A stretch of DNA of 64,000 bases, taken from IMG/VR virus record IMGVR_UViG_3300025141_000016, positions 186,001 to 250,000 of that record; one strand, given 5' to 3'. Positions 4,451-60,693 of this stretch are shown here, in pieces. A program made the translations under genes and the position numbers. The notes beneath the pieces were generated by a model. The model did not search any database. It saw only the letters and a list, made by a program, of their open reading frames with translations, and was not told where the DNA came from. How positions within the stretch are numbered: the first letter of the stretch is position 1; every line of letters begins with the position of its first letter.

Positions 4451-4588
4451 ATGCCTATTACCGCCACCAACCGAAGAACCCTCATCCGAAAAGCTGCTTC
4501 CCTACCCGTGGGATTGGCTCGGGAGGTCCAGTCGGCTCTGGGGGGTGGGAAGCTACCTGACGAGTTCGATGAGCACAGCTTTGAATGA
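4451..4588 (+). CDS. 45-aa peptide consisting mostly of a partial tag A
   Basis: GGAGA RBS; MPITATNRRTLIRKAASLPVG...; stop overlaps ATG 4585. Confidence 0.65.
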   Translation: MPITATNRRTLIRKAASLPVGLAREVQSALGGGKLPDEFDEHSFE

Positions 4589-7500
4589 TGCCCAGGCCCT
4601 CCCATAAACGAGTCGCCCGTCGTTACGCTTCCCGCACCGCGAGTGAAGCAGAGAGGTTCCCCCACGGTCCCAATGGCCCCAAGGCCGATGAGTGGTTCAG
4701 GGCATGGAGAGCACGAATAGGCCCCTACATGAGAGGAGCCTGTTACGACTTGGCGGGGTTCCTTCACGATGAAGGCGGGTTTCCCGTATGGGGGGTGATT
4801 GATGAAGACGGTATCATCGCCCACGCCTTCGCGTACAACCCCCGCATCCGAAAGGGCTTGGATGCTCGGGGTGAGGTAGACCCCGAAGATATGATGGATG
4901 GGGTAATCGGTGCCGAAAGTGTCCGTCCCCTGACCAAGAAAGAGAACCGATCTCTGTGCTCCAGATGGGGCTCCGACGAACGTGACTTCGCCCAACAGTT
5001 CGGGAAATACCTTTGGGATTTACGGGGGAGTCGTCTCGGAGCAGCCTTACGCACCGCGACCTCTACCAAGATCCCCGCAAAGACTGTCTACGCAGGGGGG
5101 TGGGAATGGAACAAGGGAGGCTTCGCGGACTGGCCTTCATTCCGACGCAAGCCCAAAAGAGAGCAGATCGCGTGGGCGAAGGAATACGTTGGCTCTGGTA
5201 TCCGCGAGCCCGTTGAGGTCACCGTGTACTCGGACGGGGGCGTGGGGTTTACGGACGGCCACCATCGAGTCATGGCGGGAACACTGCTCGACATTGAGAT
5301 CCCCGTGCGGGTCAAGTCCCGCAACTTCGACAAAGACCTGTGGCCTGACCTCCTTGCTCTGTTGAAGGCTGGGTACACACCCAAGCAGTACAACCCGCAG
5401 GGGTGGAAGCTAACCAACTCCGGTGTGCCGCCCCTGGAGGTTGTTCGCCGTGGTCCCAACGCCGCTGACGAATGGATCATGTCGAACGAGAGGGTCAAGA
5501 CCGCAGCCCGTCCCATCCGTCTCCCGACACGGGAGATCAAGGCTCTCGCCAAGAAGTTGGCGCAGCGGCTCTACCAGTGGGGGCTGCCGAAGCCCGGTCG
5601 GGTGATCGCACAGGAGTACCTGCCTCTCACCAACGTCATGGGTGACGAGGTGGAGGTCGAGATTCTACTGACGGGTACGCCCAATAAGTGGCGTGACCCG
5701 TTCAGCAGCGAACTGGTCCAAGGCGGATTCGCTCTGACGCATAAGAGGTCCGATAATCCTTTGGTGCGGATCTTTGTGAACCCGGACTTGGGCACCCGGA
5801 CGTTTGAGATGCGACCTCGCAGGATTGTCGAGAGCGAGTTGTACGAAATCCTTGCTCACGAACTCACCCATGCCGCAGACACATGGCTGGGCAAAGGCTC
5901 GGCGGTGGGCGCACTGGAAGGGCTGGGGCCGGGTTCCCACCACAACCACCCGGCAGAGGTCAAGGCACTGATGCGGGACGTGGTGACGCACCTTGAAGAT
6001 GGCGAGTACGTCCGCGAGTTGATGGGCTACGGCATGGACTTCAACACGGCTTTCCGCGAGGCACTGAAGGAAACCCAGTGGCCGGACATTGAGCCCTACC
6101 TGACTCCGAAGAACCAGAAGACCATCCTCAAAGGGGTCTACACCCACCTCCAAGACCAAGGGCTCACCAAGGCCGCGAGCAGGACCGCTGGAGGGTTCCG
6201 TCGGATCATTGATGAGATCGAAGACAAGACAGGCTTGGAGGCCAAGGTCGAGGCCGGGGCTGACAACATCAAGATCGAGTTGAAGCGCGGGACGAAGATA
6301 GTCGGCTACTTCCGAGCCTCGACGGTAGACCCAAACAGCTTCCAATGGAAGGGGGCTCCTCTGGACTGCAAAGAGGCGTGGGGTCAGATAGGGGAGCCGC
6401 CAGTCTGGATTGTCCGAGGAGCCCTGCTGAGTTGGTGGCTCCGAGGCAAGGGGTTCGGCAAGCTGCTCTACAAGGCATTGTTCTCCCACATCGCCTCCAA
6501 GAAGGGCGTTGTGGGTCCGAACCGTTGCTCCGGGGGAAACACATCACCGGATGCACAGCGGGTCTGGAAAAGCCTACGCTCGATGTACCCGAAGCATGGT
6601 CCCTTGATCGACTTGCGGAAGATGGCATCAGCCAGCCGAGTAGCCTCCCGGTTCCGCAGGATGGAAGCGGGAATGAGGACCGTCAAAGACCTTCCTGACG
6701 ACTGGTACGTCGAGATCACCGGTTCACTGTCGAATCTCGGCATCTATCTGCTGGACGGTGATGACAACACCGTAGGAAGTTTGGACATCCACCGGACAGG
6801 GGACTTCCTCCAAATCAACGAGATTCAGGCACGTCAGGGGTGGGGGCCGCTTCTTTACGATCTGGCTATGGAAGTCGCAAACGAGTTCAATGACGAGGGA
6901 CTAATGCCCGACCGTTCCTCGGTTTCGCGTGAAGCACGGGCGGTCTGGGAGCACTACCTCAATCGCCGTTCGGACGTTGAAGCGACCCTCTTGCCAGAGT
7001 GGGTACATGAACTCGCGGGTTCAGGGCACGTTCGCACACACTTGGACCGATATGAACCTGATTCCCCCCTGTCATACTCTTACCGGAAGACCACTGGAAA
7101 CCCGTTCATGCGGCAACTGGCGCTCCAAGGTCAGTTGGAGTCTGACGATTACTCTTTCGACCTCCCACGGGCCGCCGCCAGCCGTGTCGCCTCCCGGTAC
7201 GCAGGCCGAGCCTACTGCATCTGCTGGCCGACTGACGGATTGCTCTACGTCGAGGTGCCCAGCTACGACCACCTCCGCAATCTGTTGTTGACGCAGAAAT
7301 GGCGCGGGGACGCGCATTTGCGAACGAAGGACGGCTATGTCCCGTACTTCGGTGGCGGCATCGCCTTCAGCTTCACGAAGATGCGGATGAAGGGAGTCCA
7401 CCCCGTCTGGTACATCCGCAAGGGCTTCACAAAGCAACAGGCCGTGGCCCATCTGGTGGAGGATGGCTTGTTTGTGAGCGAGCGAGACGCGCTGCGTCAC

Positions 7501-9144
7501 GCTGAAGGGGATTACCCTGGCGAGTGTGAGTGGAAAGGCAAGAAGGGCCTATCGTTTACCCCGGATGCCATCGAATACGTCTGGTTAGGTAAGCGGGCAG
7601 GCAAACCGTTCGATGAGGCGAAGGCCGAGCTTCACCAGTTCATTCCCGACCTCGACGTGCGGTCGGAGGCCCCACCTTCGGGCAACAGTCCGTGCCGAGT
7701 TGCCTCCCGGTTCCGCAGGATGGAAGCGGGGCTCCTACAAGCCCCGCCGAAACTCGTCAAAGCCGTGACCGAATGGGCACAGGCCACCTTCGCTGACCGC
7801 GCCCACCACAACGCCCTGGCCAAACAGGCCAAGTTCGACCGGACAGGAGCCGGAATCATCGGGGGTCAGGACACCCTCGATCTGTGGTTCAAGAGCATGA
7901 AGCCTTGGAAGCGCACCTCCGCTGGGAAAGGGGGTGAGGTGTCCACTACGTTCGACCTCACCGACTACCTTGATGGTTGGCGGTATCGGCACCTCTGGGA
8001 CAACCTCAATGCAGGCGAGCAACGTGCTCTCCGCAAAGGCCCTCTCCGTCCGATCACCGTGACCAACGCTTTTGATGAGGGACGTTCGGGTGCCATGGGT
8101 GCTTGGTCAGACAAGAGACATGAGTTCCAAGTGTGGCTCCCCGCCGATGTCTGGATGCCAGAAGTCATCCCCGACCTTGTGGAGAAGCACGACAAACTCA
8201 TCCCGAAAACCGTTCGCCACGAGTTGCAGCACGCCACCCAAGTCATCCTCGGTGCCTTGACGGGTCAGGATTACGGGGGCCTCCCGAAACGGAAGGTGAG
8301 GCAGCCTCACAGCATCGAGGAACAACGCCAGAAGCAGATTGAGGACAACGCATCCGCATCGCGTGAAACCTTCCGCTTTCCACCAGACACGTCCAGCCCA
8401 CGCGACGACCGACGGCGAGATCGGTATTACCGCTCTGATCTGGAGTACCAGACCTCCCTCACCGATGCCGTGGGCGATTGGGAGTCCGACTCCCTACCTC
8501 CGGTGCAACGATGGTTGGACGAGACGGACCTCAATGACCGCGACAAGGGCAAGGTGCTTCGGTGGGCTGTTCGCACCTTCGTCGGTGAAGGGCGAGCACG
8601 GTTCCCCACCCTTCCGCGTGACTTCAAACGCCCTGACTGGAACCCAGGCAAGATCAAGCCGTCCGAGTTCTTTACGCACATCAAGGGCGACCGGGAGCGG
8701 TGGGCAGATGCCGTGGCGACCTTTTACAAGGAGATCGCCCGCACCACCAAACTCGCCCGCCGTGTAGCTACCCGGTATGCGAAGCGTGACTACCCGAAAG
8801 CCGGAGGCTCCGTGAGTGGGCTGCGGGTCAAAGGGGATGCCCCCAACCAGAACTCCATCAGCGCCTCGTTCTCCGACTATGAAGTGCTCCCCGACGTGCG
8901 AGAGGTACCCCTCTCCGACTTCGATGCCGCACCACATGACATGTTCTACTCGGCAAGTGACCTGGGGAGGGTCCGAGAACTCGCGGAAGCCATCGAACAC
9001 AACGGCTGGATTGCACCTCTCATCGTGGTCATAGACGATGACCCCAAGCCGTACATTCTGGAAGGAGCACACCGACTCGCCGCACTGCACACCCTGTCGA
9101 AACGAACCTTCCCCGCCCTCGTGGTGAGAGACCTCGACGGATGA
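4585..9144 (+). CDS. polyvalent polyprotein: papain-like, ParB-like, zincin, GNAT, GNAT, unknown, zincin, ParB-like; tag-B linkers
   Basis: GACY...AHAF...LDARG; DGHHR; HELTH; LRGKGFGKLLY; QGWGPLLYDL; HELQH; LEGAHRL. Modules are separated by SRVASRF/Y, RRVATRY and [KR]TA. Confidence 0.85.
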   Translation: MMPRPSHKRVARRYASRTASEAERFPHGPNGPKADEWFRAWRARIGPYMRGACYDLAGFLHDEGGFPVWGVIDEDGIIAHAFAYNPRIRKGLDARGEVDPEDMMDGVIGAESVRPLTKKENRSLCSRWGSDERDFAQQFGKYLWDLRGSRLGAALRTATSTKIPAKTVYAGGWEWNKGGFADWPSFRRKPKREQIAWAKEYVGSGIREPVEVTVYSDGGVGFTDGHHRVMAGTLLDIEIPVRVKSRNFDKDLWPDLLALLKAGYTPKQYNPQGWKLTNSGVPPLEVVRRGPNAADEWIMSNERVKTAARPIRLPTREIKALAKKLAQRLYQWGLPKPGRVIAQEYLPLTNVMGDEVEVEILLTGTPNKWRDPFSSELVQGGFALTHKRSDNPLVRIFVNPDLGTRTFEMRPRRIVESELYEILAHELTHAADTWLGKGSAVGALEGLGPGSHHNHPAEVKALMRDVVTHLEDGEYVRELMGYGMDFNTAFREALKETQWPDIEPYLTPKNQKTILKGVYTHLQDQGLTKAASRTAGGFRRIIDEIEDKTGLEAKVEAGADNIKIELKRGTKIVGYFRASTVDPNSFQWKGAPLDCKEAWGQIGEPPVWIVRGALLSWWLRGKGFGKLLYKALFSHIASKKGVVGPNRCSGGNTSPDAQRVWKSLRSMYPKHGPLIDLRKMASASRVASRFRRMEAGMRTVKDLPDDWYVEITGSLSNLGIYLLDGDDNTVGSLDIHRTGDFLQINEIQARQGWGPLLYDLAMEVANEFNDEGLMPDRSSVSREARAVWEHYLNRRSDVEATLLPEWVHELAGSGHVRTHLDRYEPDSPLSYSYRKTTGNPFMRQLALQGQLESDDYSFDLPRAAASRVASRYAGRAYCICWPTDGLLYVEVPSYDHLRNLLLTQKWRGDAHLRTKDGYVPYFGGGIAFSFTKMRMKGVHPVWYIRKGFTKQQAVAHLVEDGLFVSERDALRHAEGDYPGECEWKGKKGLSFTPDAIEYVWLGKRAGKPFDEAKAELHQFIPDLDVRSEAPPSGNSPCRVASRFRRMEAGLLQAPPKLVKAVTEWAQATFADRAHHNALAKQAKFDRTGAGIIGGQDTLDLWFKSMKPWKRTSAGKGGEVSTTFDLTDYLDGWRYRHLWDNLNAGEQRALRKGPLRPITVTNAFDEGRSGAMGAWSDKRHEFQVWLPADVWMPEVIPDLVEKHDKLIPKTVRHELQHATQVILGALTGQDYGGLPKRKVRQPHSIEEQRQKQIEDNASASRETFRFPPDTSSPRDDRRRDRYYRSDLEYQTSLTDAVGDWESDSLPPVQRWLDETDLNDRDKGKVLRWAVRTFVGEGRARFPTLPRDFKRPDWNPGKIKPSEFFTHIKGDRERWADAVATFYKEIARTTKLARRVATRYAKRDYPKAGGSVSGLRVKGDAPNQNSISASFSDYEVLPDVREVPLSDFDAAPHDMFYSASDLGRVRELAEAIEHNGWIAPLIVVIDDDPKPYILEGAHRLAALHTLSKRTFPALVVRDLDG

Positions 9145-10478
9145 TCAAACCCTCTGCCAGCCGTGTTGCCTCCCGGTATGCGGGCCGCTCTGTCCCTCCC
9201 TTCAAGGTTCGGGATGCGGCGGCGAAGACACCTTCGGATCTGCCCGATGGGTGGTATGTGGTTGCCCGCTGGGTCGGCCCGTCGAGGTCATTCCAGTTGT
9301 ACGACGGAAAGAAAGAGGTCGGGTATATCCGAGCGACCCCGAACTCCTCCTGTGGTGGGGCCTATACGGTGCGTCAAGTATGGGCACCCTCCGGTTGGGG
9401 TCCGATGCTCTATGACCTGATGATGGAGGATGCGGGTCGTTATGGGGTGATGCCGGATCGAAGTCAGGTATCGGAAGACTCCGCTCGTGTTTGGTTCCAC
9501 TACCTCACGAAACGCCGCCGTGATGTGACCGCACACCCTTTGTGGGATGACCCCTCCATTCGTGATGATCGGGCGTGCGGCTATCATTATGAAGATACTG
9601 GTCCCGGTGTGTTTGAGTCCTTGGACTATCGGTACGTCAAGGACGGTCGCGGAGTGACGGGCTCACTGGAGCGTGAGGGCAGGCTCTTTGAAGGTGAGCA
9701 TCCCGAGTGGTCCGGTGTCCGAAAAGAAGCTGTGGCGCAGCGGTATGCGAAGCGACCCTTCGACCTCGCCATGAACGGACTGAAAGGTCTGGACGAGGGA
9801 AGGACCGTGACCCTGTACCACGGCACCACACGATCCTTCGACCGCTTTGACCTCACCAAGTCCAGGGACGAACTCGTCAACGACTTCTACGGCAAGGGGA
9901 TCTTCCTGACCCCATCCAAGAACGTCGCCTGGAAGTACGCCAACGCCAACCGGAACATCGGCCTCGACCCCAGCATCATTGGCGAACTGAAACGCAAGAA
10001 GCCCCAGGCCGGAGCCTTTCTGGAAAGCCTCTACTCCCAGGGATCCGATGCCTGGGAACCCATGCTCGCAGAAGCCAAAGCCGCAGGGCACGAACCCTAC
10101 GAGCACGAGGACTTCCTCAACGGGGTGGACGGGAACACCCTCGGTGACATAGCGGGGTACATCGAAGGGAGTGCAGTCCCACCACGCGGGGGCGGCTCAA
10201 CCAACATCTTCTCGACCAGTAGCGGTGCCCCCTACTGGCTCTACGACACCCTCGATGAAGTGGGCCTCGACTCCTCGGCGTACCGACCCAAGGTCTACAC
10301 CGTTGGGGTCACCGTACAGAACCCCCTCATCACCGCAAGCGCATCCGAAGCCCGCAAGGCAAGAGCCAATGGCTACGACAGCGTGGTCTTCCACGGCTCT
10401 CGGCTGGTCGATGGCTGGCCCGAGGTCGCCGTGTTTTCACCCAGGAACGCCAAGATCAAAAAGGTCGAGGTCGAGTAA
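9141..10478 (+). CDS. tag-B protein: GNAT plus ADP-ribosyltransferase-like (ART-PolyVal type) domain
   Basis: SASRVASRY; GWGPMLYDLMME; LYHGT...YGKGIFLT...GYDSV...EVAVF. Confidence 0.8.
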   Translation: MIKPSASRVASRYAGRSVPPFKVRDAAAKTPSDLPDGWYVVARWVGPSRSFQLYDGKKEVGYIRATPNSSCGGAYTVRQVWAPSGWGPMLYDLMMEDAGRYGVMPDRSQVSEDSARVWFHYLTKRRRDVTAHPLWDDPSIRDDRACGYHYEDTGPGVFESLDYRYVKDGRGVTGSLEREGRLFEGEHPEWSGVRKEAVAQRYAKRPFDLAMNGLKGLDEGRTVTLYHGTTRSFDRFDLTKSRDELVNDFYGKGIFLTPSKNVAWKYANANRNIGLDPSIIGELKRKKPQAGAFLESLYSQGSDAWEPMLAEAKAAGHEPYEHEDFLNGVDGNTLGDIAGYIEGSAVPPRGGGSTNIFSTSSGAPYWLYDTLDEVGLDSSAYRPKVYTVGVTVQNPLITASASEARKARANGYDSVVFHGSRLVDGWPEVAVFSPRNAKIKKVEVE

Positions 10479-10613: not shown

Positions 10614-11824
10614 CGGACCCGTAGGGTCAGGAGAAACTAACCATGTCCAAGACCATTACCGCTTCTGACCGGAGCCGATTGATTCGACTCGCTTCAACAA
10701 TGTCTGCTGGCTCTCCCGAGCGGAAGGCCATCCTCGCTGGGTTGTCAAAGACCGCTGGAGAACACCCGCTGGGCCGCATGGCAATCGTCTACTTCGATTT
10801 GATCATTGAGGCTTACAACATTGAGGAGGACGCGGAAAACGGTGACGAGTTCGCACAGAGCCTCATGGATGATGGTGGTCGAGGTATGAACAAGTTGGAG
10901 GGTGACGCTCTCAAAAACCTGTCCCGCATGTTCGGACAGCGAATCAGCAACGAGGGGCATGGCCCCGACGGCGCACTTGTCTGCAAGTTCCCAGTGAACT
11001 CGTGGGCAGAGGTCAAGAAAGCCAATGACGTAATCAACAAGAACCACACTGGCGGTGACGATAACATCGACACGGGCGTTCAGTACGTTGAGGCACGGGA
11101 CTTTCGCCTCCACCCGGAGGGCGTGGGACAAAATCAGGCTTTCTACGGTGAGCACTCCCGTGCAGAGGGTGATTGGGACGAGTGGCTGTCCGACCACAAG
11201 TAATCCCTATCGGACCCGTAGGGTCAGGAGAAACTAACCATGCCCAAGACCATTACCGCTTCTGACCGAGCCAGCTTGATCCGGCTCGCTTCCTGTCTAC
11301 CCGTAGAGCGGAAGGCAATCCTGGCTGGGCTCCAGAAGACGGCAGCCATGGAGCCGTGGGATTCCCCCGATTACGTCTTTGAAGACCCAAAGGATGAAGA
11401 TGACTACATCACTCTCTTTGAGGAAGGGACCACACGCCACTACGATGTGAACGTCTCTGGCCGCGTGGATTCAGCGAAGGATGGGCTCCTCCTACTCCAC
11501 AAGGAGTTCGGTCGTGGGGGTAAGGAAAGCCGCGACTTTGAGGGTCAGTACCTCTGGGGGACAGGCTACTCCATCACAGCGATCCCCCCAAACAATCTGT
11601 CCTATGAGCGGTGGCATAACGACAAGGCCCACTTGGCAAAGATCCACAAGGTTCTGGACAGGATCAAGAAGATGCCAGGAGTCAAAAAGGTCAGCTTGGA
11701 GGAACGGCCCGACAGTGCAGACCTGCATAAGAAACAAGGGCAGGCCATGAAGCGGTGGGTCGCCAAGGGTCGGACCCTGCGAACTGCGAAGAAGACACCC
11801 TATCGGACCCGTAGGGTCAGGAGA
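10608..11824 (+). repeat. three exact 27-nt leader repeats CCCTATCGGACCCGTAGGGTCAGGAGA
   Basis: Copies at 10608-10634, 11205-11231 and 11798-11824, each followed by ATG and a tag-A coding sequence; internal hairpin GACCC-GTA-GGGTC. Confidence 0.95.
10643..11203 (+). CDS. tag-A protein, hypothetical cargo
   Basis: MSKTITASDRSRLIRLASTMSAGSPERKAILAGLSKTA. Confidence 0.85.
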   Translation: MSKTITASDRSRLIRLASTMSAGSPERKAILAGLSKTAGEHPLGRMAIVYFDLIIEAYNIEEDAENGDEFAQSLMDDGGRGMNKLEGDALKNLSRMFGQRISNEGHGPDGALVCKFPVNSWAEVKKANDVINKNHTGGDDNIDTGVQYVEARDFRLHPEGVGQNQAFYGEHSRAEGDWDEWLSDHK

Positions 11825-12244
11825 TACACCATGCCCAAGACCCTCACCGCAACTGACCGATCCCGATTGATCCGGCTCGCTTCCACTATGGCTGCTGGCT
11901 CTCCCGAACGGAAAGCGATCCTCGCGGGCTTGGAGAAGCAAGGGGGTGCGTCGAAGACGGCCTACAGCGACAAGTTTGGTCTTCGGTTCAACTTTCGGGA
12001 CGGTTTCTCATTCACGACGGTCCCTGTTGACCCCCCCTACAACCAGACATATTCGGGCTTTATCCTGATAAAGAAGCCCGGACGGGTGAAGGCGTACAGA
12101 GCGGCGATGGCCTACGTCAACCAGAACCGTAGGGAGATCGAACGCATGAAAAGAACAAAAGATGTTCTCGGTGCCATCAACGACTACGCCCGTCAGGTGA
12201 GCGGTAAGGAGCCCTACTGGCACCGATACCTGATGCCAGACTGA
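11240..12244 (+). CDS. double tag-A protein (in-frame fusion of two cassettes; internal start at 11831)
   Basis: Tag A at the N-terminus and again at ATG 11831, which has its own leader repeat and RBS. Confidence 0.85.
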   Translation: MPKTITASDRASLIRLASCLPVERKAILAGLQKTAAMEPWDSPDYVFEDPKDEDDYITLFEEGTTRHYDVNVSGRVDSAKDGLLLLHKEFGRGGKESRDFEGQYLWGTGYSITAIPPNNLSYERWHNDKAHLAKIHKVLDRIKKMPGVKKVSLEERPDSADLHKKQGQAMKRWVAKGRTLRTAKKTPYRTRRVRRYTMPKTLTATDRSRLIRLASTMAAGSPERKAILAGLEKQGGASKTAYSDKFGLRFNFRDGFSFTTVPVDPPYNQTYSGFILIKKPGRVKAYRAAMAYVNQNRREIERMKRTKDVLGAINDYARQVSGKEPYWHRYLMPD

Positions 12245-12259: not shown

Positions 12260-12784
12260 ATGCCCAAGACCATTACCGCTGCCGACCGATCCCGATTGAT
12301 CCGGCTCGCTTCCTCGATGCCCGTAGGCTCCGATGAGCGGAAAGCCATCCTCGCTGGGTTGAGGGTTGCTGACCGCGCTATCGACAAAGCCGTGGACTAT
12401 CTGGTGAAGGCCCAGCGTATTCTCTCGGGAGTCCCCGGATGGGGCACTGCTCCGTATGGGGGGTATGACCGCTCCCTGACCGAGTTGATCAAGGTCTTAC
12501 GGGCCGGACCCAACAAGAAGGCTTCAGCTTCGTTGAAGGATGTGCTGCGAAAGTGGCCCGAGTTTGCCCCCGAGATCCAAAAGGAACTGCGAGGGCTGCG
12601 GGCGGCGTTGCGAGGCGACCCCGACTTCGGGCGCGTGAGTAATGCCCTCATACAGATCCAGATGCGGCTGGAAGACGACCACCGCAGAGACCCAGCGGCT
12701 TTCCATGCCCGCGCACCCTTCAACAAAGCACTCGCTGACTTTGCAAAGGCCGAGTACGAACACAAGACGGGCAATAAGTGGTAG
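12260..12784 (+). CDS. tag-A protein, hypothetical cargo
   Basis: MPKTITAADRSRLIRLASSMPVGSDERKAILAGLRVA. Confidence 0.85.
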   Translation: MPKTITAADRSRLIRLASSMPVGSDERKAILAGLRVADRAIDKAVDYLVKAQRILSGVPGWGTAPYGGYDRSLTELIKVLRAGPNKKASASLKDVLRKWPEFAPEIQKELRGLRAALRGDPDFGRVSNALIQIQMRLEDDHRRDPAAFHARAPFNKALADFAKAEYEHKTGNKW

Positions 12785-35205: not shown

Positions 35206-35558
35206 CACAGCCCCTTGATCTTGTCGTCAATGTCCCTGGCGATAGGGGCGAGTTTCTTCAGCGCGGAGTCGAGGTTGCTGATGATCTCCTCTCGGAGTGC
35301 GCGGAGCCCTTTCTGGTCGCTGCCGTGTTCCTCAATCCAGAGGGCTAAACCATCCTCGGGGTCATCGAGGTAGGTCCACTTGGCCGCATCATGCACAGCC
35401 TTGACGACCCCCTTGTAGAACTCGGCATTGAGTTTCTGGATCTCGCGGGAAGGCGGGTCAGACCGACCTCCCCGCTTCAGGGCAGCGAGGATTTCCCGGC
35501 GCTCCTCTGACCCCTTGGGGAAGGAGGCAGCTTTTCGGATAAGGGTTCGGCGGTTCAT
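35205..35558 (-). CDS. tag-A protein, hypothetical cargo
   Basis: MNRRTLIRKAASFPKGSEERREILAALKRG. Confidence 0.85.
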   Translation of the reverse strand: MNRRTLIRKAASFPKGSEERREILAALKRGGRSDPPSREIQKLNAEFYKGVVKAVHDAAKWTYLDDPEDGLALWIEEHGSDQKGLRALREEIISNLDSALKKLAPIARDIDDKIKGL

Positions 35559-35944: not shown

Positions 35945-36015
35945 TTTGACCCCTTGGGGAAGGATGCTCGGCGGATCAATCGGCTTCGGTCAGCGGCGGT
36001 CAGGCTCTTGGACAT
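35941..36015 (-). CDS. 24-aa tag-A stub
   Basis: MSKSLTAADRSRLIRRASFPKGSK*; TAATG and ATGA couplings; not in the ORF track. Confidence 0.6.
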   Translation of the reverse strand: MSKSLTAADRSRLIRRASFPKGSK

Positions 36016-44637: not shown

Positions 44638-45500
44638 ACACCTCTCGCACAGCGGCGGGAACCTACGTCCAGATCACTCGGCAGGAGTTTGAGGATTGGC
44701 TGGACTCCCTCGGGTTCCGGGGGAAGTGGCGACTCAAACCCGGTCGGGGCGGGATGTACCAACTCTTTTTGAGCCCCCAGGTGATGATTGAGATCAACAG
44801 CACCACGGGGTCACAGGCCCAGGTGATGCAACGGGGCCGCGCCTCCATGTCGTTGAAACTCGTCTCGCGGATCACGGGGAAGGTGCTGAACAAGAAAGCC
44901 ATGGGACAGCGACACTTCGCGAGAACAACGAACTGGCGTAAGAACTGGGCCAAGGGCGTTGAGCGGATGAAGACCGCCTACGAGGGGTCAAGGGGCTGGT
45001 ACGACCAGATTGCCGAGATTGAAGACCGCGACAAGTACAAGGCTGAAATGATGGGGCGTATCGAAGCCATCCCTGACTGGGACGGTGACGCTTTTCTCAC
45101 GAGCCTCCACGAACGGCTGGGGAAGGGTGGTGTCCTGACGGGCAAGCAAAAGGCAGCCCTGGAAAGAACAGAGGGAAGACGGCAGCCTGCACGGGAGCCG
45201 GAACAACCCCCCCGGCCTCGACGCGAGCGCCCGGAACCACCTACCCGTTCGCGGGTCCGAGAGCCGGAGCCCCCAGCGGAGCCCGCATGGCAACCTCCTG
45301 ACATTGAGACGGTACGGGAACTCTATCGCAGGGCTCGTGCTTCCAACGACACTTGGACCTTGGGGTTCGTGGAGTCTGTGGGGAAGATGATCAAGGGGGG
45401 TCGTCCATTGAGCGACCGCCAACAAAAGGTGCTTGATGAGAAGCTGGAAGACTACCGGCTCGGCCCGAACTCCCGGCGTGCCCATATCGTAGGGTGGTGA
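44634..45500 (+). CDS. hypothetical protein with two F..S.......L[TS].[KR]Q helical repeats
   Basis: MNTSRTAAG; FLTSLHERLGKGGVLTGKQ and FVESVGKMIKGGRPLSDRQ. Confidence 0.75.
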   Translation: MNTSRTAAGTYVQITRQEFEDWLDSLGFRGKWRLKPGRGGMYQLFLSPQVMIEINSTTGSQAQVMQRGRASMSLKLVSRITGKVLNKKAMGQRHFARTTNWRKNWAKGVERMKTAYEGSRGWYDQIAEIEDRDKYKAEMMGRIEAIPDWDGDAFLTSLHERLGKGGVLTGKQKAALERTEGRRQPAREPEQPPRPRRERPEPPTRSRVREPEPPAEPAWQPPDIETVRELYRRARASNDTWTLGFVESVGKMIKGGRPLSDRQQKVLDEKLEDYRLGPNSRRAHIVGW

Positions 45501-45504
45501 CCCC

Positions 45505-48500
45505 ATGGCACCCTTCCCCCAGCGTCTTCGATGCCAGGAGGACGGTGACTTCTACTTGATGGATCTGGCGAAGGATACCTTCGTTCACTTCACGCCCCCC
45601 GAACGGGCCGAGCAGATCATCCGGTCAGGTAAGTTGCTGATGCGACCGCCGTACAAGAAGTTCGGGATCGACGCGGTGACGGCGGTGTCAGCGGTATGGG
45701 GTAGCTTCGTACCCGGTGTGCAAACCACCCACAGCAAGCGTGATGATCTTGTCGCGGTGGTGTTTCAGACCAGAACTCTTCCCCAGGTCGGTCACCCCGA
45801 GGAGGTCATCTGGAAGCGCGATGTGGCTCTCGTCAACCCCAAGATCGTGTCCTACTCCAAGGGCAAGGGGATGCTGCGAAGTGGGTTCGACGGTCAGGTC
45901 TACTACTCGATGCCCTCGTGGTGCGATGGGGTCGAGAGTCGAACGGCCTCCCTGCTTTGCAATCCCAATGCTCTCTCGGGAGCATGGATTGACCCCACGG
46001 GGAAGGTATACGAGATACGGCGTGGGCTGACACATGACCAGTGGGCTGACGACCACCTCACCAACGACAGGGAATACCAGCAACAGATGTGGGATGTTGG
46101 TGCAGGTTCTCTCCTCCAAGATCGAGGATGGGTCCGGTTCGTCAACTTCATCAACATGGCTGTTGGAACCCGACCCTCTCGGGCAGCGATGGAAGCGGCT
46201 GCTGACCTCGTAGCTGATTGTGTGCTCTCCAGGCGTGATGTTGACCCCGAGAAGGACACCCTTTGGCTTGAGACGGGGCCGATGCCCCATGCCCGTGAAC
46301 TGTCTATATCCACCTTCATAGAGGAATACGGTTCCAAGGCCACGGAGGAGAAAATGTGGGAAGGTTTGCTGGCCCGCTTGGCTTCCCGAGTCACTGCTCG
46401 TTATCTCGATGCCGCCTGTGGTCCGGTGCCTCGGATCGTGGTTGCAGCCAACCTCAAAGCGTTGAAGCCGAACGACTGGCTGACCGTCTACCACGGCACT
46501 ACGCTGTCCACGGCCCCGAAACTACTCAACGGGTTCGACTCTACGAGAGTCAAGTCCCGACAGTTCGGGGGGCCGCGTCATAAAGGGCTGTTCGTCACCC
46601 CCACCTTCCGCACGGCACGCAACTTCGCCTCGTATGGACCAACCGTGCTGGAAATGGTGGTCCGGGCCAAGAACCTCCACGGCACGGACTACTCCGGGGT
46701 CACTGGACGGGATGATCCCAGAAGGGAAGAGATTTGGCGAGACAAGTACCCCGACTCCTTTCGGCCTTACTTGTCCCAGACATTGACACAGGGACATGAA
46801 CCGCAGGCGCTACTTCAAGGGCTCGTCGCACCGCGCCAGATCAAACGGGTTTGGCACGCACCGGGCCAGAATGAGCCGGGACAGTGGTATTCCCGTAAGG
46901 AGTTCCTCGATCTGGGGCTGGACCCCTCGGCCAACCCACGGGACAAGCAAGACCCCCTGCGGGATCTGGGCATTGACCTCTCCTACCCCAACTACGACTA
47001 TGACGAGTTCATAGAAGCCCTCGGGGTAGCCTATGGAAAACCCGGCAAGCCAATGAGCCGTGAACGCATCGAGAAGACGCTCACCATGCACGCTGAAATC
47101 TCGATGATTCCGGGGCGTTCTGACACATTACTGGAACTGATTGAGGGGGCGGGGTTCCAAGGACGCGCAGCACAGCGTTACGCCGACCGATTCCGTGAAA
47201 CCCTCGCTCAACAAAGCCGAGAGGTTGCCGCCAGCGCAAGTCGAGTCGCTGCCCGCTACCTCGTCGCAGACTGCAATCTGCGGCTTCCCTCTCATTCATG
47301 GATTGACCCCAAGGGGAAGGTTCATTTGGTTCCCCTTATGCACGATGTCTGGGCCGAGGAAAAGATACGATCTACGCCCTCGATGCTGCGTTCGTTTGTG
47401 AAACGCTACAGGGAATACTATCCCGATGAACTCTATGAGATCGACCATCCGTGGACCAGTTTTCTGGTTGACCAAGGTTGGGTGAGGGTGGCGAACTTTC
47501 TGAACTTTGAGGGGAGAGATCACCTTGTTTCCCCGCACGCTTGGGAGTCAGCCGCAGACCTCATCATCAACTGTGTGGTCAAGAAGCAGCTTGACCCCGA
47601 GACTACTGTCGTGACGGTCGCTGGATATGGGAAGCAGCGATACTCGGTGTCCCAGATCGTCAGGGAATGGGGTGGGCGCAAGGCCGAGGATCGGTTGTTT
47701 GGGGCACTCATGGCCCGCACCGCTGCCCGACTTTGGTATCACGGGACTGAAAAGCGTTTTGAAGAGTTCAAGACCTTTGAGAGCCACACGTTTGGGTCTG
47801 ACCCCTCCGAAGTGCCTCTGTTCTTCTCGCCCTCCAAGTCCTTTGCAAAGATGCACGCCCAAGGACCGAAGGGGGTCATCTACACGGCGCGGCTGAAGTG
47901 GCGCAAGGTGTTTGATAGCGCCAACTTGTATCGGGAATCTCGGTACTGGCCCCCCGAACGTGACGCTCTGACCCAAGAGGGGAAGGCCCTGTACGACGAC
48001 CTCGTAGGGGGCAAGGTGTTTCCCGGCATTGATGAAGACGATCTGCTTGACGGGTATCCGAGTCTTTGGTCGCAGGTGCTCCGTATGGATTACGATGTGA
48101 TTGAAACGACGGAGTTCAAGCGGTGGCTCAAAAAGAACGGTTACGACGCGGCTTATGTCACGGGAGATGGTGAGCAGAACGTGTTTGTCTTCTCCCCGAG
48201 ACAGGTCGAGGTTGTGGGCGTGCAAAGGGCCTCCGCATCCGTTTCTGCTTCCCGTGTCGCTGCTCGCCATCCCGTCGTGGACATTGACCCCAGCAAAGTA
48301 AAGTTCAAGATCCGATCCAGTAGCGATGCTGTGGCTGTGGAAATGCGGTATGGCGGTAAGCGCATTGGCGGCATGAACGCCCACAAGGTCCGTTATCCAG
48401 AAGAGAAGGACTGCCCTCGGGACGTTACCGCGTTGGCTGAACGCTTCCCCGAGTTGGTGACGGGAGAATGGAAGCGCAGCGATGGTGAGGTGTGGCGATA

Positions 48501-58823: not shown

Positions 58824-59135
58824 GTGTACCGATTATGGATTGTGGACCGGGATCTGAAACCGACCGTGCTGAGTGCGGCTTACCTGACCGTCCATGAGGC
58901 GATGGGGTCGGCAGCGCGTTTGATGAAGGGGTTTGGTGCCCCGGCGTTGGATGCCAGGAACATTCTGATGTGGGCAGGGAAGCCCAGCCTTGTGGTCTTT
59001 GACCCCACCTTTTCGGTCGTTGTGTCGGCGGTCATCGAGGGAGGTCAACTGGTGTCGAGTGGTGACGATCCTGTCCCCCTTGATCCTGACGACAACGTGG
59101 GTCCATGCCAGACGACCCCTTCAATCTCCGAGTAG
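58824..59135 (+). CDS. hypothetical protein
   Basis: GGAGG RBS before GTG. Confidence 0.5.
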   Translation: MYRLWIVDRDLKPTVLSAAYLTVHEAMGSAARLMKGFGAPALDARNILMWAGKPSLVVFDPTFSVVVSAVIEGGQLVSSGDDPVPLDPDDNVGPCQTTPSISE

Positions 59136-59150
59136 CGGTAGGAGCCCTAT
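59136..59150 (+). promoter_or_regulatory. class L promoter motif
   Basis: CGGT-AGGAGCC-CTAT, 29 nt before GTG 59179. Confidence 0.65.
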
Positions 59151-59178
59151 AGGTTCCGAGGGGTCAGGAGCCCTCATC

Positions 59179-60201
59179 GTGAATCACCCGGACCCCAAAC
59201 GAGTTGCTATCGCTGTGTCTCCGCAGCATCAGGCGGCTCGGGTAGCGGCTCGCTACGCCTCCTCCCCTCTGATAAAGGAGTTGGAGGAAGACTACCATTC
59301 CCTCTGGCATGACAAGCATGAAAGGGAGGACGGAAAGCCTCGGCTGTGCCCACTGAAAGCTGGGGTGCCCGATTGTGAGAAGATGACCCTCAAAGAGTTC
59401 GTTGCCAAGTGGAAGAGGCACGGGCTGAAGGCGGTAAAGGTCCAACGGCTTCCTACCACCTACTCCTACTATGACTGTGGGAGCCACGCCACGCTGCGGA
59501 CGGAACAGATCCATGGCAGCCGACTTTACCCCCAAGGCGACATCACGGTTGACTTGAACACCCCCATTCCTTGGAGCAAGGCGAAGAAAGGCGACTGGGT
59601 TCAATGGCCATGGCACCACGGAGTGGTGATTGATCCCAAGCGCAAGATTGTGGAGAGTTGTTGGGGGGTAGACGGATGGGTGTTTCAACACCCCGTAGAC
59701 CTTTCTACTTATGGGGCGAAGCCTACGGTTCATTCCGTGCATCCAAAAGAGAAGACCAAGACCGCCAGTTCTGATGGTCAGTGTATCGTCGGAGGCCAGT
59801 GCTTCCGCTACGCTGTCATGTGGGATGGCAAAGGCCCAGGATCATCCCCTGACGACATTGTTGTTCACGGGAACGTGCATGGCTTGGTCGGTCCTCACGC
59901 CTGGGTCGAGCGGAAGGACGGTCGCGTATTTGACTGGCAGACGGTTGAGGGGATCTGGGAGACGCTTGGCCGTCAACCTGACCCCAGCTACACCAAGCGC
60001 GGCTGGCCGAAGCGTGAGTTCTACGCGGAGTTCAAGCCGCGCAAGATGAAGCGGTACACCGCCGAAGACGCGCTGATCAACGGGATACGGAACCGGCACT
60101 ACGGTCCCTGGGACGCGGATGAGGAGTACCGTCCTCCAATCCGATCAGCATCGCGGGTTGCCGCTCGCTACTTGATGGCTTCTCGGCGGCAACGCCGGTA
60201 G
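59179..60201 (+). CDS. tag-B protein with two papain/transglutaminase-like (Cys-His-acid) domains
   Basis: AARVAARY; YDCGSHA...HHGVV...VESCWG; KTKTAS junction; GQCFRYA...PHAWVE...VFD; C-terminal SASRVAARY. Confidence 0.75.
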   Translation: MNHPDPKRVAIAVSPQHQAARVAARYASSPLIKELEEDYHSLWHDKHEREDGKPRLCPLKAGVPDCEKMTLKEFVAKWKRHGLKAVKVQRLPTTYSYYDCGSHATLRTEQIHGSRLYPQGDITVDLNTPIPWSKAKKGDWVQWPWHHGVVIDPKRKIVESCWGVDGWVFQHPVDLSTYGAKPTVHSVHPKEKTKTASSDGQCIVGGQCFRYAVMWDGKGPGSSPDDIVVHGNVHGLVGPHAWVERKDGRVFDWQTVEGIWETLGRQPDPSYTKRGWPKREFYAEFKPRKMKRYTAEDALINGIRNRHYGPWDADEEYRPPIRSASRVAARYLMASRRQRR

Positions 60202-60210: not shown

Positions 60211-60243
60211 CTCTCCGATAAGGTCAAGTACCGGAGACAACCC

Positions 60244-60693
60244 ATGTCCAAGACCCTTACTGGATCTGACCGTAAACGCCTCATCCGCCTTGCTTCTACC
60301 CTCCCCACGGGGTCAGATGAGCGGAAGGCTATCCTTGCTGGGCTTCACCATGTCGCCGTCCACAAGACCGCCTCCAAGAAGACCACCCTCTCGGCAGATT
60401 TGAAGTTGAAGGACGGGACCGTGTACGCGAAGGGATCGCGTGCAGAGGTGTTCTTCTCGGAGCGCAACCCCTCCATGTCCGAGGTGGAGATTGAGGGTAG
60501 GAAGATCAAACTCCGCACGGTCAGTCTCCACAAGTACCTCCGTGGTTTTCCAAAGCCCCCCTCCACGAGAGCCTTGCAGAAGATGGACAGTGAGGCTTCC
60601 GGGCCAACGGTCAGTGGGGTACGCAACGTCGAGATGGACGGCTATGGTCCCGATGGGTCACCCTCGTGGATGCTGGCCATGGGGCTCATCTGA
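60244..60693 (+). CDS. tag-A protein, hypothetical cargo
   Basis: MSKTLTGSDRKRLIRLASTLPTGSDERKAILAGL...HKTAS. Confidence 0.85.
   Translation: MSKTLTGSDRKRLIRLASTLPTGSDERKAILAGLHHVAVHKTASKKTTLSADLKLKDGTVYAKGSRAEVFFSERNPSMSEVEIEGRKIKLRTVSLHKYLRGFPKPPSTRALQKMDSEASGPTVSGVRNVEMDGYGPDGSPSWMLAMGLI

What the first reader, a model, noticed from the sequence alone, without database searches (positions are those of the whole stretch)
4585..60400. [KR]-[TVEQ]-A as a candidate prohead-protease cleavage site
Seen: SRTA, LRTA, VKTA and SRTAG at junctions in 4585-9144; SKTA, QKTA, LRTA and LRVA in the 10.6-12.8 kb cluster; QRTA (35.1 kb); GKTAG, TRTAG and LKTAS (36-37 kb); SRTAA (44634); SRTAS and ARTAA (45505); KTKTAS (59179); HKTAS (60244). 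They sit right after tags or between modules. Established: head-maturation proteases cut short motifs, usually ending in Glu in T4 and phiKZ. Inference: this phage's protease cuts after K/R-x-A, releasing single domains and removing the tags.
Basis: partly seen in the sequence, partly recalled or inferred. Interest (0 to 1): 0.62.

Follow-up and report, generated by a model that had tools for sequence, protein, structure and literature searches.

The report
Candidate capsid-protease cut sites in cargo tags
A huge phage marks about 40 of its proteins with two short peptide tags built around Lys/Arg-x-Ala, and the same motif sits at conserved positions in the phage's own capsid-maturation protease and scaffold, so it is probably where that protease cuts; no protein chemistry has tested this.

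Summary
The enrichment is real, but only for [KR]-[TV]-A. The E and Q forms are at chance in this genome. The RVA hits are the core of a 16-residue tag (Tag A, PSAS-RVA-[AS]-R-[YFWH]). Most KTA hits end a 40-residue helix-turn-helix tag (Tag B). Forty of 256 proteins carry a tag. Outside the tags, [KR]TA[SAG] occurs 15 times against 1.9 expected in tagged proteins, and 9 against 10.9 in untagged ones. The record encodes a prohead protease with the herpes-assemblin/T4 gp21 fold (Z 10.1/9.6), outside the window. In 120 homologues, [KR]-x-A-S is near-invariant at both ends of the protease. It also lies 20-23 residues from the scaffold C-terminus in 112 of 120. In all three places P2 varies while P3 and P1 are fixed. 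In the window proteins the sites fall at module junctions and in predicted disordered linkers. ADP-ribosyltransferase orthologues carry interchangeable leaders that nearly all contain the motif. Best reading (0.55): this protease cuts after [KR]-x-A, removing capsid-targeting leaders and cutting polyvalent proteins into single domains, as for T4 capsid-targeting sequences but with assemblin-like Ala|Ser specificity. Cleavage itself is untested. The capsid protein has no propeptide.

The parts
4585..9144 (+). 1519-aa polyvalent protein with five Tag A copies and four further [KR]TA sites, which cut it into segments of about 125-350 aa; ParB-like nuclease matches at aa 204-251 and 1437-1518
4591..4638 (+). 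Tag A (PRPSHKRVARRYASRT), followed directly by SRTAS (4633-4644)
5050..5061 (+). RTAT site, aa 156
5497..5508 (+). KTAA site, aa 305
6181..6192 (+). RTAG site, aa 533 (AASRTAGGFRRI, a V-to-T variant of Tag A); a homology block ends at aa 527
6619..6666 (+). Tag A (KMASASRVASRFRRME); homology blocks end and begin here
7165..7212 (+). Tag A (PRAAASRVASRYAGRA)
7678..7725 (+). Tag A (SGNSPCRVASRFRRME)
8743..8790 (+). Tag A (TTKLARRVATRYAKRD), ahead of the C-terminal ParB-like module
9144..9191 (+). N-terminal Tag A (IKPSASRVASRYAGRS) of the 445-aa ART-PolyVal protein (gene 9141-10478); a second site/tag variant, RKEAVAQRY, at aa 195 precedes the ART domain
10643..10768 (+). N-terminal Tag B ending AILAGLSKTAG (gene 10643-11203)
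11240..11356 (+). N-terminal Tag B ending AILAGLQKTAA (gene 11240-12244)
11831..11956 (+). Internal Tag B of the same gene, followed by GGASKTAY
12260..12385 (+). N-terminal Tag B ending AILAGLRVAD (gene 12260-12784)
3542..3640 (-). Weak N-terminal Tag B (gene 2981-3643); RTAS site at 3368-3379
35095..35208 (-). N-terminal Tag B ending ILSGLHQRTAL (gene 34411-35208)
35454..35558 (-). N-terminal Tag B (gene 35205-35558)
36015..37886 (-). 623-aa four-module protein. All three sites lie in, or at the edge of, predicted disordered linkers.
37029..37040 (-). KTAG, aa 283. Module 1 ends at 278-281. Module 2 starts at 287, which matches residue 3 of stand-alone proteins beginning MAHH...
36735..36782 (-). 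Tag A variant ERMAATRTAGRHERGL (aa 369-384) in the low-confidence linker 368-406. Homologues carry RAAS, RVAS or RTAG at the same place.
36183..36308 (-). Internal Tag B (two predicted helices, 533-545 and 551-564) ending ILAALKTASS; a disordered stretch follows
39701..39748 (-). N-terminal Tag A (TRPSCSRVAARHLSAG) of gene 38678-39751
44646..44657 (+). RTAA at aa 5 of gene 44634-45500 (MNTSRTAAGTY); a possible degenerate Tag A, below my HMM threshold
45940..45951 (+). RTAS, aa 146 of the 1247-aa protein 45505-49248
47227..47271 (+). Tag A (AASASRVAARYLVAD). The block homologous to the C-terminal end of another protein stops at aa 574, just before it.
47716..47727 (+). RTAA, aa 738
48235..48282 (+). 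Tag A (ASVSASRVAARHPVVD)
59221..59268 (+). Tag A (PQHQAARVAARYASSP) in gene 58990-60201
59758..59769 (+). KTAS, aa 257. A homology block ends at aa 253.
60136..60183 (+). C-terminal Tag A (PIRSASRVAARYLMAS), 5 residues from the stop
60244..60375 (+). N-terminal Tag B followed by VHKTASKK (gene 60244-60693)
60774..60821 (+). Near-N-terminal Tag A variant (MSASPQKVAERWASEA) of gene 60744-61229
62688..62795 (+). N-terminal Tag B ending ILALIKEAGA (the gene starts at 62685 and runs off the window)
63822..63947 (+). Internal Tag B of the same gene, ending VLLRQASD

Best explanation
[KR]-x-A followed by S, A or G, usually with I, V or L at P5, is probably the recognition and cleavage motif of this phage's capsid-maturation protease. 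The protease is encoded outside the window at genome 19549-21045. In canonical head proteins the motif marks three places: an N-terminal and a C-terminal autoprocessing site of the protease, and a site 20-23 residues from the scaffold C-terminus. Cutting that last site would free the scaffold from the shell, as the herpesvirus M-site does. In the window the same motif is embedded in two families of short peptides. Tag A is a 16-aa peptide and Tag B a 40-aa helix-turn-helix. They sit at N-termini, at inter-module junctions and sometimes at C-termini of about 40 proteins. These include polyvalent proteins with ParB-nuclease and ADP-ribosyltransferase modules. The proposed mechanism is that the tags bring the cargo into the procapsid, and the protease then cuts after the Ala. 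This would remove N-terminal leaders and separate polyvalent proteins into single domains that are ejected with the DNA.

Shown here: the motif, its specificity to tagged proteins, its conservation in the protease and the scaffold, the fold of the protease, the junction and linker positions, and the interchangeability of the leaders.

Inferred, not shown: cleavage itself, capsid targeting, and ejection.
For: 1. A prohead protease gene lies in a head module ordered portal, cargo genes, protease, acidic scaffold, decoration candidate, 294-aa major capsid protein. Its modelled catalytic domain matches pseudorabies virus assemblin (Z 10.1), T4 gp21 (Z 9.6) and the HCMV, HSV-1, KSHV and EBV proteases (Z 7.5-8.2); these fill the top 23 rows.
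2. Protease sites in 120 homologues. N-site: P3 K82/R18, P2 V/T/Q/A, P1 A100, P1' S87. C-site: P3 R84/K14, P1 A100, P1' S86, P2' S79. The N-site lies in the disordered first 31 residues.
3. Scaffold. 112 of 120 homologues have K-x-A-[SAG] 20-23 aa from the C-terminus, with P2 varying among E, A, T, K, Q, S, G, D and V. Two further K-[KR]-A-[AS] sites lie just upstream. The same is seen in LR745208, Tunturi_5 gp332 and contig k141_1955163.
4. Phage G gp19, Tunturi_5 gp331 and Catera gp94 carry KVAS, KIAS or KTAG just after the protease domain. Phage G head-module proteins hold about 29 K-x-A-[SAG] against about 6 expected.
5. Specificity. [KR]TA[SAG] outside the tags is 15 vs 1.9 in tagged proteins and 9 vs 10.9 in untagged ones. 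In LR745208 tagged proteins, [KR][TVEQ]A[SAG] is 18 vs 4.9.
6. A PSSM trained only on homologues' canonical sites ranks post-Tag-B sites high. Of 24 non-canonical hits at 8.5 bits or more, 11 fall in the 19.6% of residues that belong to tagged proteins (p 0.003).
7. Junctions. Homology-block ends coincide with sites (20/96 vs 7.3). KTA|GHH in window protein 36015-37886 corresponds to the N-terminus MAHH of stand-alone homologues, and a second fusion has RFA|GHH at the same point. The end of that module is followed by RAAS, RVAS or RTAG in all homologues seen.
8. The AlphaFold model places the three sites of that protein in, or at the edge of, low-confidence linkers.
9. Of 109 ART-PolyVal orthologues with short leaders, the same domain is preceded by Tag-A-like (47), YDRR[VA]AAK-type (32) or Tag-B-like (7) peptides. 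88 of the 109 leaders contain [KR]xA.
10. Tag B is widespread: 1802 clusters at 50% identity. N-terminal copies are usually followed by x-K-x-A-[ASG].
Against: - There is no proteomic or biochemical evidence for cleavage in this phage or in any relative I could read.
- Tag A is conserved beyond the protease logo. It has P-S-A-S upstream and R-[YFWH] at P2'-P3', where the canonical sites have Ser at P2'. It scores poorly with the canonical PSSM. It may therefore be a binding peptide rather than, or as well as, a substrate.
- Three tags lie at C-termini, and many C-terminal Tag B copies in metagenomes end right after helix 2 with no K-x-A. Cleavage there would achieve little.
- The protease C-site sits at a helix-helix junction inside a confidently predicted helical domain, not in a disordered loop.
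- The major capsid protein has no propeptide.
- E and Q at P2 are not enriched in this genome's tagged proteins.
- Some Tag B copies are followed by K-T-S or nothing similar.
Confidence: 0.55

Rival explanations
1. The tags are only targeting or docking peptides (capsid loading or assembly into a complex). [KR]-x-A is part of their binding surface or helix cap. The protease may cut its own ends and the scaffold, but not the tagged proteins, which stay intact as polyvalent proteins.
For: - Tag A and Tag B are conserved over 16 and 40 residues, far more than a protease subsite needs.
- Tags occur at C-termini.
- Different leaders are interchangeable in front of one domain, as expected of address labels.
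- Tag A fits the canonical site logo poorly.
- Some phage polyvalent proteins, such as the N4 virion RNA polymerase, are packaged uncut (PMC5512222).
Against: - [KR]TA[SAG] is also enriched in tagged proteins outside the tags (15 vs 1.9).
- These sites lie exactly at module junctions that equal the natural N-termini of stand-alone homologues.
- The same three fixed positions (P3, P1, P1') with a free P2 recur in the protease and the scaffold, which have no tags.
Confidence: 0.27
2. The motif and tags serve something unrelated to the capsid. Examples are a site for another phage or host protease, a modification site (R-x-x-S resembles a basophilic kinase site), a secretion or localisation signal, or a shared host-factor-binding peptide.
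For: - No direct evidence places tagged proteins in virions.
- Many tagged genes in the window lie far from the head module.
- P1' is often Ser.
Against: - P1' is frequently Ala or Gly, which cannot be phosphorylated.
- The motif's best-conserved copies are in the protease and the scaffold.
- Tagged genes fill the space between portal and protease in the head module, as in a third phage.
- The tags are not hydrophobic like signal peptides.
- The domains carried (ParB nuclease, ART-PolyVal, nucleotidyltransferase) are those predicted to be packaged and injected (PMC5512222).
Confidence: 0.13
3. Chance, amino-acid composition, or a DNA-level recombination linker that happens to encode these residues.
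For: The genome has 60% G+C and is rich in Ala and Arg. The loose pattern [KR][TVEQ]A is expected about 210 times by chance.
Against: - Shuffle z-scores of 8-12.
- The enrichment is confined to tagged proteins.
- Synonymous codons differ between copies.
- The motif is conserved in a 55% G+C relative and in phage G, reported at 29% G+C.
Confidence: 0.02

Closest known systems
T4 capsid targeting sequences (CTS) of internal proteins, cut by prohead protease gp21
   Same: Short N-terminal leaders shared by unrelated cargo proteins, ending in the protease motif. The protease fold is the same (gp21 Z 9.6). Cargo includes an ADP-ribosyltransferase, as T4 packages Alt (PMC5512222).
   Different: T4 cuts after Glu in (L/I)-x-E (my knowledge). 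Here the fixed residues are Lys/Arg at P3 and Ala at P1. The tags here also occur internally and at C-termini, and there are at least two or three unrelated tag families. Nothing here has been shown experimentally.
phiKZ gp175 / SPN3US gp245 processing of head and ejection proteins
   Same: A giant phage with many internal head proteins, where the protease trims propeptides from a set of them (PMC10052503).
   Different: Those proteases cut after Glu (A/S/G-x-E, my knowledge). SPN3US propeptides are long and not a shared tag. This phage belongs to a different clade, the relatives of phage G.
Herpesvirus assemblin with its R-site and M-site
   Same: The fold matches (Z 8-10). Ala at P1 and Ser at P1' are conserved. 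One site lies about 20-25 residues from the scaffold C-terminus, and others flank the catalytic domain. Assemblin specificity, (V/L/I)-x-A|S, is from my knowledge.
   Different: Protease and scaffold are separate genes here. An invariant basic P3 is not an assemblin feature. Assemblins do not process dozens of cargo proteins.
Polyvalent proteins of phages (Iyer et al. 2017) and phage P1 Dar/DdrB cargo
   Same: Multi-domain proteins with ParB-like nuclease and ART-PolyVal modules, encoded near virion genes and predicted to be packaged and injected.
   Different: That work proposes processing by MPTase peptidase domains built into the proteins. My Pfam and PHROG scans of the tagged proteins returned no peptidase family. 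The junctions carry a motif that matches the prohead protease's own sites.
Encapsulin cargo-loading peptides
   Same: Short peptides, interchangeable between cargo proteins, at either terminus, that load cargo into an HK97-fold shell (my knowledge).
   Different: No sequence relationship was shown. Encapsulin peptides are not removed by a protease.

Membership tests
Prohead protease of the assemblin / T4 gp21 / HK97 gp4 fold | Characteristic beta-barrel catalytic fold | tested here: met
   AlphaFold model from 56 sequences. Residues 48-268 align to pseudorabies virus pUL26N (Z 10.1, rmsd 2.7, 119 aa), T4 gp21 (Z 9.6, 137 aa) and HCMV, HSV-1, KSHV and EBV proteases (Z 7.5-8.2). The top 23 rows are all from this family. 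Foldseek alone was weak (gp21 E 0.028).
Prohead protease of the assemblin / T4 gp21 / HK97 gp4 fold | Conserved His and Ser catalytic residues with a third His/acid about 25 residues after the Ser | tested here: inconclusive
   H128 (FQEH) and S179 (LSMG) are invariant and H205 is at least 90% conserved in 56 sequences. The spacings are 51 and 26 residues. I did not superpose them on a solved active site.
Prohead protease of the assemblin / T4 gp21 / HK97 gp4 fold | Gene lies between portal and major capsid protein, next to a scaffold | tested here: met
   Portal 2986-4707, protease 19549-21045, acidic repeat protein 21055-22431, major capsid protein 23342-24226. The order is the same in Tunturi_5 and in contig k141_1955163.
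Prohead protease of the assemblin / T4 gp21 / HK97 gp4 fold | Cleaves head proteins at a defined short motif | not testable with these tools
   Comparative conservation only.
Capsid-targeting leader peptides (T4 CTS type) | A common short N-terminal peptide on otherwise unrelated proteins | tested here: met
   27 of 55 tag copies start within the first 30 residues of proteins with different domains. Of 109 ART orthologues with short leaders, 86 carry one of three interchangeable leader types.
Capsid-targeting leader peptides (T4 CTS type) | The leader ends in the protease's cleavage motif | tested here: met
   8-9 of 22 Tag B copies are followed within 12 aa by [KR]TA. In LR745208 the tag is followed directly by KEA, KTA, KQA or RQA, and in metagenomic homologues by x-K-x-A-[ASG]. 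This matches the logo of the canonical sites.
Capsid-targeting leader peptides (T4 CTS type) | Directs the protein into the prohead and is removed there | not testable with these tools
   No virion proteome is available. The one complex prediction (protease with a Tag A peptide) gave no answer.
Polyvalent proteins (Iyer et al. 2017) | Several unrelated effector domains in one polypeptide, from the known repertoire | tested here: met
   PF18760 ART-PolyVal (E 1.2e-10) in 9141-10478. ParB-like nuclease matches in 4585-9144 and in four tagged proteins outside the window.
Polyvalent proteins (Iyer et al. 2017) | Built-in MPTase or other peptidase domain for autoprocessing | tested here: not met
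   No peptidase family appeared in the Pfam or PHROG scans of the tagged proteins. This feature is common in the family but not obligatory.

The most novel reading that the evidence does not exclude
A clade of huge phages (relatives of phage G, with genomes of about 220-500 kb, plus many uncultured ones) may use a general system of leader peptides to load the capsid. At least three interchangeable tags, present in more than 1800 protein clusters, would send about one sixth of the phage's proteins into the procapsid. An assemblin-fold protease with an undescribed [KR]-x-A|[SAG] specificity would then strip the tags and cut polyvalent polyproteins into single-domain effectors for injection.
Probability: 0.4. 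Interest if true: 0.8.

Novelty: new variant of a known kind. Interest (0 to 1): 0.68.

Why it matters
If correct, one short rule would let anyone read, from sequence alone, which proteins of these huge phages travel inside the capsid and where they are cut. This would apply to phage G and to hundreds of uncultured soil and water phages. It would turn about 40 'hypothetical' genes per genome into a defined set of injected effectors, including nucleases, ADP-ribosyltransferases and RNA-repair enzymes. It would suggest how polyvalent proteins without a built-in peptidase could be released into separate domains. It would offer portable tags for loading foreign proteins into large capsids. It would also link a phage protease to the Ala|Ser specificity of herpesvirus assemblins, which bears on the shared ancestry of the two maturation systems. 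The prediction can be tested on phage G (proteomic data published), on Tunturi_5 (isolated on a Tunturiibacter host) and on cluster C mycobacteriophages (isolated on M. smegmatis).

Tried and rejected
- Megablast of 8 kb of the window and tblastn of the 1519-aa protein against INPHARED phages gave no match. Relatives were found only through the capsid protein and the protease.
- Pfam families for T4-type (PF03420) and HK97-type (PF04586) proteases and for Terminase_6N were absent from the record. PF05065 gave only a sub-threshold hit. PHROG profiles found the genes instead.
- phmmer of the protease against PDB sequences found nothing useful.
- Complex prediction of the protease catalytic domain with the Tag A N-terminus of 9141-10478 returned 'no answer' (score 0.09 against a mark of 0.32). 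I count it neither for nor against.
- I suspected that the protease C-terminus carries half a Tag B. The Tag B HMM does not support this (E > 1). It instead aligns LIRLAS of Tag B to the protease C-site LVRVAS, which I treat as a weak hint only.
- No Tag A or Tag B HMM hit appeared in the 40-kb head regions of Tunturi_5 and phage G, apart from a weak Tag-A-like N-terminus in phage G gp13.
- The ESM Atlas feature search on Tag B gave no usable hit.
- Literature searches for the motif strings and for cleavage data in phage G or cluster C mycobacteriophages found nothing. The phage G structure paper (PMC7316594) is not held.
- A DNA-level recombination linker was considered and rejected, because codons differ between copies.
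- A signal-peptidase or lipobox reading of ILAGL-x-KTA was rejected, because the tag has no hydrophobic core and no Cys.
- I did not use the sequencing-run or read-laying tools, and no other genetic code was needed.


Full report
WHAT THE WINDOW IS

The window is bases 186001-250000 of a single 297,104-bp IMG/VR virus record. The record is linear and CheckV estimates it at 67% complete. G+C is 60%. I called 256 genes with a codon-usage model trained on the record itself; 63 of them touch the window. The window has no tRNA genes.

THE OBSERVATION

The loose pattern [KR][TVEQ]A occurs 323 times against 210 expected from per-protein shuffles (z 8.1). Nearly all the excess is RVA (82 vs 39), plus RTA in the window (16 vs 7). 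KEA, RQA and KQA are near chance.

- Tag A is [PA]-S-[AP]-S-R-V-A-[AS]-R-[YFWH]. It has 27 strict matches and 33 HMM matches.
- Tag B is a roughly 40-residue peptide, MSKTITAsDRSrLIRLASTLPvGSxERKAILAGLxKTA, with 22 copies at E < 1e-5.

Codons at synonymous positions differ freely between Tag A copies, so the conservation is on the peptide and not on the DNA.

Forty proteins carry a tag; together they hold 19.6% of all residues. Of the 55 tag copies, 27 are N-terminal, 25 internal and 3 C-terminal. Fifteen tagged genes lie in the window.

It is not.

| Set | Motif | Observed | Expected |
|---|---|---|---|
| Untagged proteins | [KR]TA | 42 | 44.3 |
| Untagged proteins | [KR]TA[SAG] | 9 | 10.9 |
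| Tagged proteins, outside the tags | [KR]TA | 26 | 8.7 |
| Tagged proteins, outside the tags | [KR]TA[SAG] | 15 | 1.9 (z 9.6) |
| Tagged proteins, outside the tags | [KR][EQ]A | 19 | 18.8 |

The class II RNR-like protein (NrdJ-like) has no KTA or RTA. The AAA_5 ATPase has one.

THE HEAD MODULE AND THE PROTEASE

The record starts with the large terminase (122-2050) and the portal (2986-4707). Further on lie:

- a 498-aa ORF matching a head-maturation-protease PHROG (E 1e-12; the called product is 478 aa);
- an acidic repeat protein (21055-22431) that I take to be the scaffold;
- a 212-aa decoration candidate;
- a 294-aa major capsid protein (phrog_2522, E 9e-55). The profile match begins at residue 8, so the protein has no delta domain or propeptide.

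These assignments rest.

By capsid-protein similarity the relatives are the uncultured 485-kb phage LR745208.1 (83% identity), Tunturiibacter phage Tunturi_5 (50%), Bacillus phage G (41%) and cluster C mycobacteriophages (about 29%).

An AlphaFold model of the protease (56 sequences, mean pLDDT 77) has these parts:

- a disordered N-terminus (1-31);
- a confident catalytic domain (about 32-268);
- a disordered acidic linker;
- a confident helical C-terminal domain.

The catalytic domain aligns to pseudorabies virus assemblin (Z 10.1), to T4 gp21 (Z 9.6) and to other herpesvirus proteases (Z 7.5-8.2). These fill the top 23 rows.

THE MOTIF IN CANONICAL SUBSTRATES

This is the key evidence. In 120 protease homologues two positions carry a near-invariant motif.

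| Site | Position | Homologues | P3 | P2 | P1 | P1' | P2' |
|---|---|---|---|---|---|---|---|
| Protease N-site | res 26-29 | 107 of 120 | K82/R18 | V/T/Q/A | A100 | S87 | mostly S (61) |
| Protease C-site | res 390-393 | 108-114 of 120 | R84/K14 | mostly V | A100 | S86 | S79 |
| Scaffold site | 20-23 aa from the C-terminus | 112 of 120 | K (R in 2) | E, A, T, K, Q, S, G, D, V | A | S, A or G | mostly S |

The commonest scaffold forms are KEAA (39), KAAS (19), KEAS (17) and KTAS (8). Two more K-[KR]-A-[AS] sites lie just upstream, and the conserved tail is SEVxDLSKLWESAPDVSKFF.

All three sites share I, V or L at P5. A fixed P3 and P1 with a free P2 is what a protease subsite pattern looks like, not what a structural helix looks like.

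The placement, at both ends of the catalytic domain and about 21 residues from the scaffold C-terminus, parallels the R-site and M-site of herpesvirus assemblin, which cuts Ala|Ser. That specificity is established knowledge and was not tested here.

The same arrangement is seen in single genomes:

- LR745208: scaffold KVAS, protease KQAS.
- Tunturi_5: gp332 KVAS, gp331 KVAS.
- Phage G: gp19 KVAS and KIAS.
- Catera: gp94 KTAG straight after its protease domain, and RTAG 20 residues from its end.
- A third uncultured phage, contig k141_1955163.

In phage G, whose genome is reported at 29% G+C, head-module proteins hold about 29 K-x-A-[SAG] against about 6 expected.

LINKING THE CANONICAL SITES TO THE WINDOW

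A PSSM built only from the homologues' canonical sites, with this phage's own proteins left out, ranks this phage's three canonical sites first and then many post-Tag-B sites. Of 24 other hits at 8.5 bits or more, 11 lie in tagged proteins (p 0.003). Tag A scores poorly with this matrix.

In LR745208, Tag B has diverged to MTTLRSKLIRLAHENPALRPHLLPLL. It is still followed directly by KEA[AGM] (7 copies), or by KTAG, KQAG or RQAG; in one copy RTAA follows two residues later (LLPLLADRTAA). Tagged proteins there have [KR][TVEQ]A[SAG] 18 times against 4.9 expected.

A profile of Tag B finds 1802 clusters at 50% identity (849 at E <= 1e-10) among 1.84 billion proteins. The ten clusters I looked up are all metagenomic, named 'hypothetical protein' or unnamed. 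N-terminal copies are typically followed by x-K-x-A-[ASG]. Many C-terminal copies stop right after helix 2.

One such protein lies on the same 222-kb contig as a protease-scaffold-capsid module of this family.

JUNCTIONS AND LINKERS

Ends of BLAST homology blocks in tagged proteins lie within 8 residues of a [KR][TV]A site 20 times out of 96, against 7.3 +/- 2.4 for random sites.

The clearest case is window protein 36015-37886(-).

- Module 1 ends at residue 278-281.
- KTA|G is at 283-286.
- Module 2 begins at 287 with GHHQGS. It corresponds to residue 3 of stand-alone proteins that begin MAHH.
- An independent fusion has RFA|GHH at the same point.
- The end of module 2 is followed by RAAS, RVAS or RTAG in every homologue examined.

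An AlphaFold model of this protein puts the three sites in, or at the edge of, low-confidence stretches: 261-284, 368-406, and the residues after 564. It also shows Tag B as two helices.

INTERCHANGEABLE LEADERS

The ADP-ribosyltransferase domain of window gene 9141-10478 (PF18760) has many stand-alone orthologues of about 260 aa. Of 109 with a short leader:

- 47 begin with a Tag-A-like peptide;
- 32 begin with a third type, YSYDRR[VA]AAK;
- 7 begin with Tag B of either subtype, for example ...HLLPLLKTASGFDPSHYGLEGL;
- 88 of the 109 leaders contain [KR]xA.

Unrelated peptides that replace one another in front of the same domain, and that nearly all keep the same three-residue motif, behave like removable address labels.

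INTERPRETATION

The best-supported reading is that [KR]-x-A|[S/A/G] is the cleavage motif of this assemblin-fold prohead protease, that the tags are capsid-targeting leaders or linkers, and that polyvalent proteins are cut at these sites into single domains. The nearest working parallel is the T4 capsid targeting sequence with gp21, but with an assemblin-like Ala|Ser bond and a basic P3. I put this at 0.55.

The main rival (0.27) is that the tags are only address or docking peptides, and that the protease cuts just itself and the scaffold.

Points against the cleavage reading:

- Tag A is conserved beyond the logo (P-S-A-S upstream, R-aromatic downstream).
- Some tags are C-terminal.
- The protease C-site sits at a helix-helix junction.
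- There is no proteomic evidence at all.

The single complex prediction allowed (protease with a Tag A peptide) gave no answer and is not used.

COMPARISON WITH WHAT IS KNOWN

Iyer et al. (PMC5512222) predicted that phage polyvalent proteins are packaged, and proposed processing by built-in MPTase domains. My Pfam and PHROG scans of the tagged proteins here returned no peptidase family. The SPN3US work describes Glu-specific processing of head proteins in a different clade (PMC10052503). Searches for the motif strings and for cleavage data in phage G or cluster C phages found nothing. As far as these libraries show, the motif and both tags are undescribed. I class the finding as a new variant of a known kind: prohead-protease processing of tagged capsid cargo.

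LIMITS

- Gene calls are my own and some starts are uncertain. For example, the 4734 gene probably starts at Met29, and the protease starts at Met21.
- The record may be incomplete.
- Tag counts depend on HMM thresholds.
- Repeated paralogous segments inflate some site counts, such as the three GLKTAS copies in one protein.
- All statements about cleavage, packaging and ejection are inference.

Noticed in passing
L001:4734-5834 (genome coordinates, outside the window): The gene just after the portal carries Tag B and three copies of GLKTAS. Two of them are followed by an identical STRTRTAKYNTKLRATD. The called N-terminus is an Arg-Ser repeat that probably lies upstream of the true start (Met29).
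   Followed up: partly
L002:3055-4431 (genome 21055-22431): The scaffold candidate is built of acidic repeats alternating with a basic helix (EEASDEEEAKGKKARALRAKALRMLRLAD). The xLRLAD helix loosely resembles the LIRLAS helix of Tag B.
   Followed up: no
L001:14816-18583 and window 49373-50578: A 1255-aa protein between portal and protease combines a HAD 'Swiss-army-knife RNA repair' domain with a eukaryotic-type topoisomerase IB catalytic core (PF01028, E 3e-24). A second HAD_SAK_1 protein lies in the window. A 905-aa protein with a nucleotidyltransferase match and a Tag-A-like N-terminus lies next to the first (genome 11563-14280).
   Followed up: partly
window 20272-23307 (-): A MoxR-type AAA_5 ATPase (with a Ros/MucR-like N-terminus) lies next to a von Willebrand A protein. 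This is a pair usually seen in cellular genomes. Both are untagged.
   Followed up: no
window 41056-44637: A UvrD/Rep-family helicase of 1193 aa with an N-terminal extension of about 260 aa that matches no family. It is followed by a 288-aa protein starting MNTSRTAAG and by the 1247-aa tagged protein.
   Followed up: no
L027 (Bacillus phage G, NC_023719.1 3283-44131): gp13, just before the portal, begins MKRLISKTAARYAAS, which resembles Tag A. gp4, gp7, portal gp14 and protease gp19 are several-fold enriched in K-x-A-[SAG] despite the genome's reported 29% G+C.
   Followed up: partly
L028 (Mycobacterium phage Catera, gp93 and gp94): Two proteins of about 1350 aa lie upstream of the capsid gene. 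gp94 starts with the protease domain. Both are rich in R-T-A-[AG] and look like polyproteins of the head module.
   Followed up: partly
P0402-P0520 (orthologues of window 9141-10478): A third leader type, (M)xYSYDRR[VA]AAK, precedes the ART-PolyVal domain in 32 of 109 orthologues. I did not search this phage's own genome for it.
   Followed up: partly
L002:5342-6226 (major capsid protein) and its homologues: The N-arm holds GRxKLAAS, conserved in this phage, LR745208, Tunturi_5 and contig k141_1955163 but not in phage G. It fits [KR]-x-A-[SAG] and could be a cut site or simply structural.
   Followed up: no
L030:16246-17337 (contig k141_1955163): A related huge phage encodes a protein with an AcrVA2-like Pfam match (anti-CRISPR family) next to its replication genes.
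   Followed up: no
window 1-64000: No tRNA or tmRNA gene in the whole window.
   Followed up: yes
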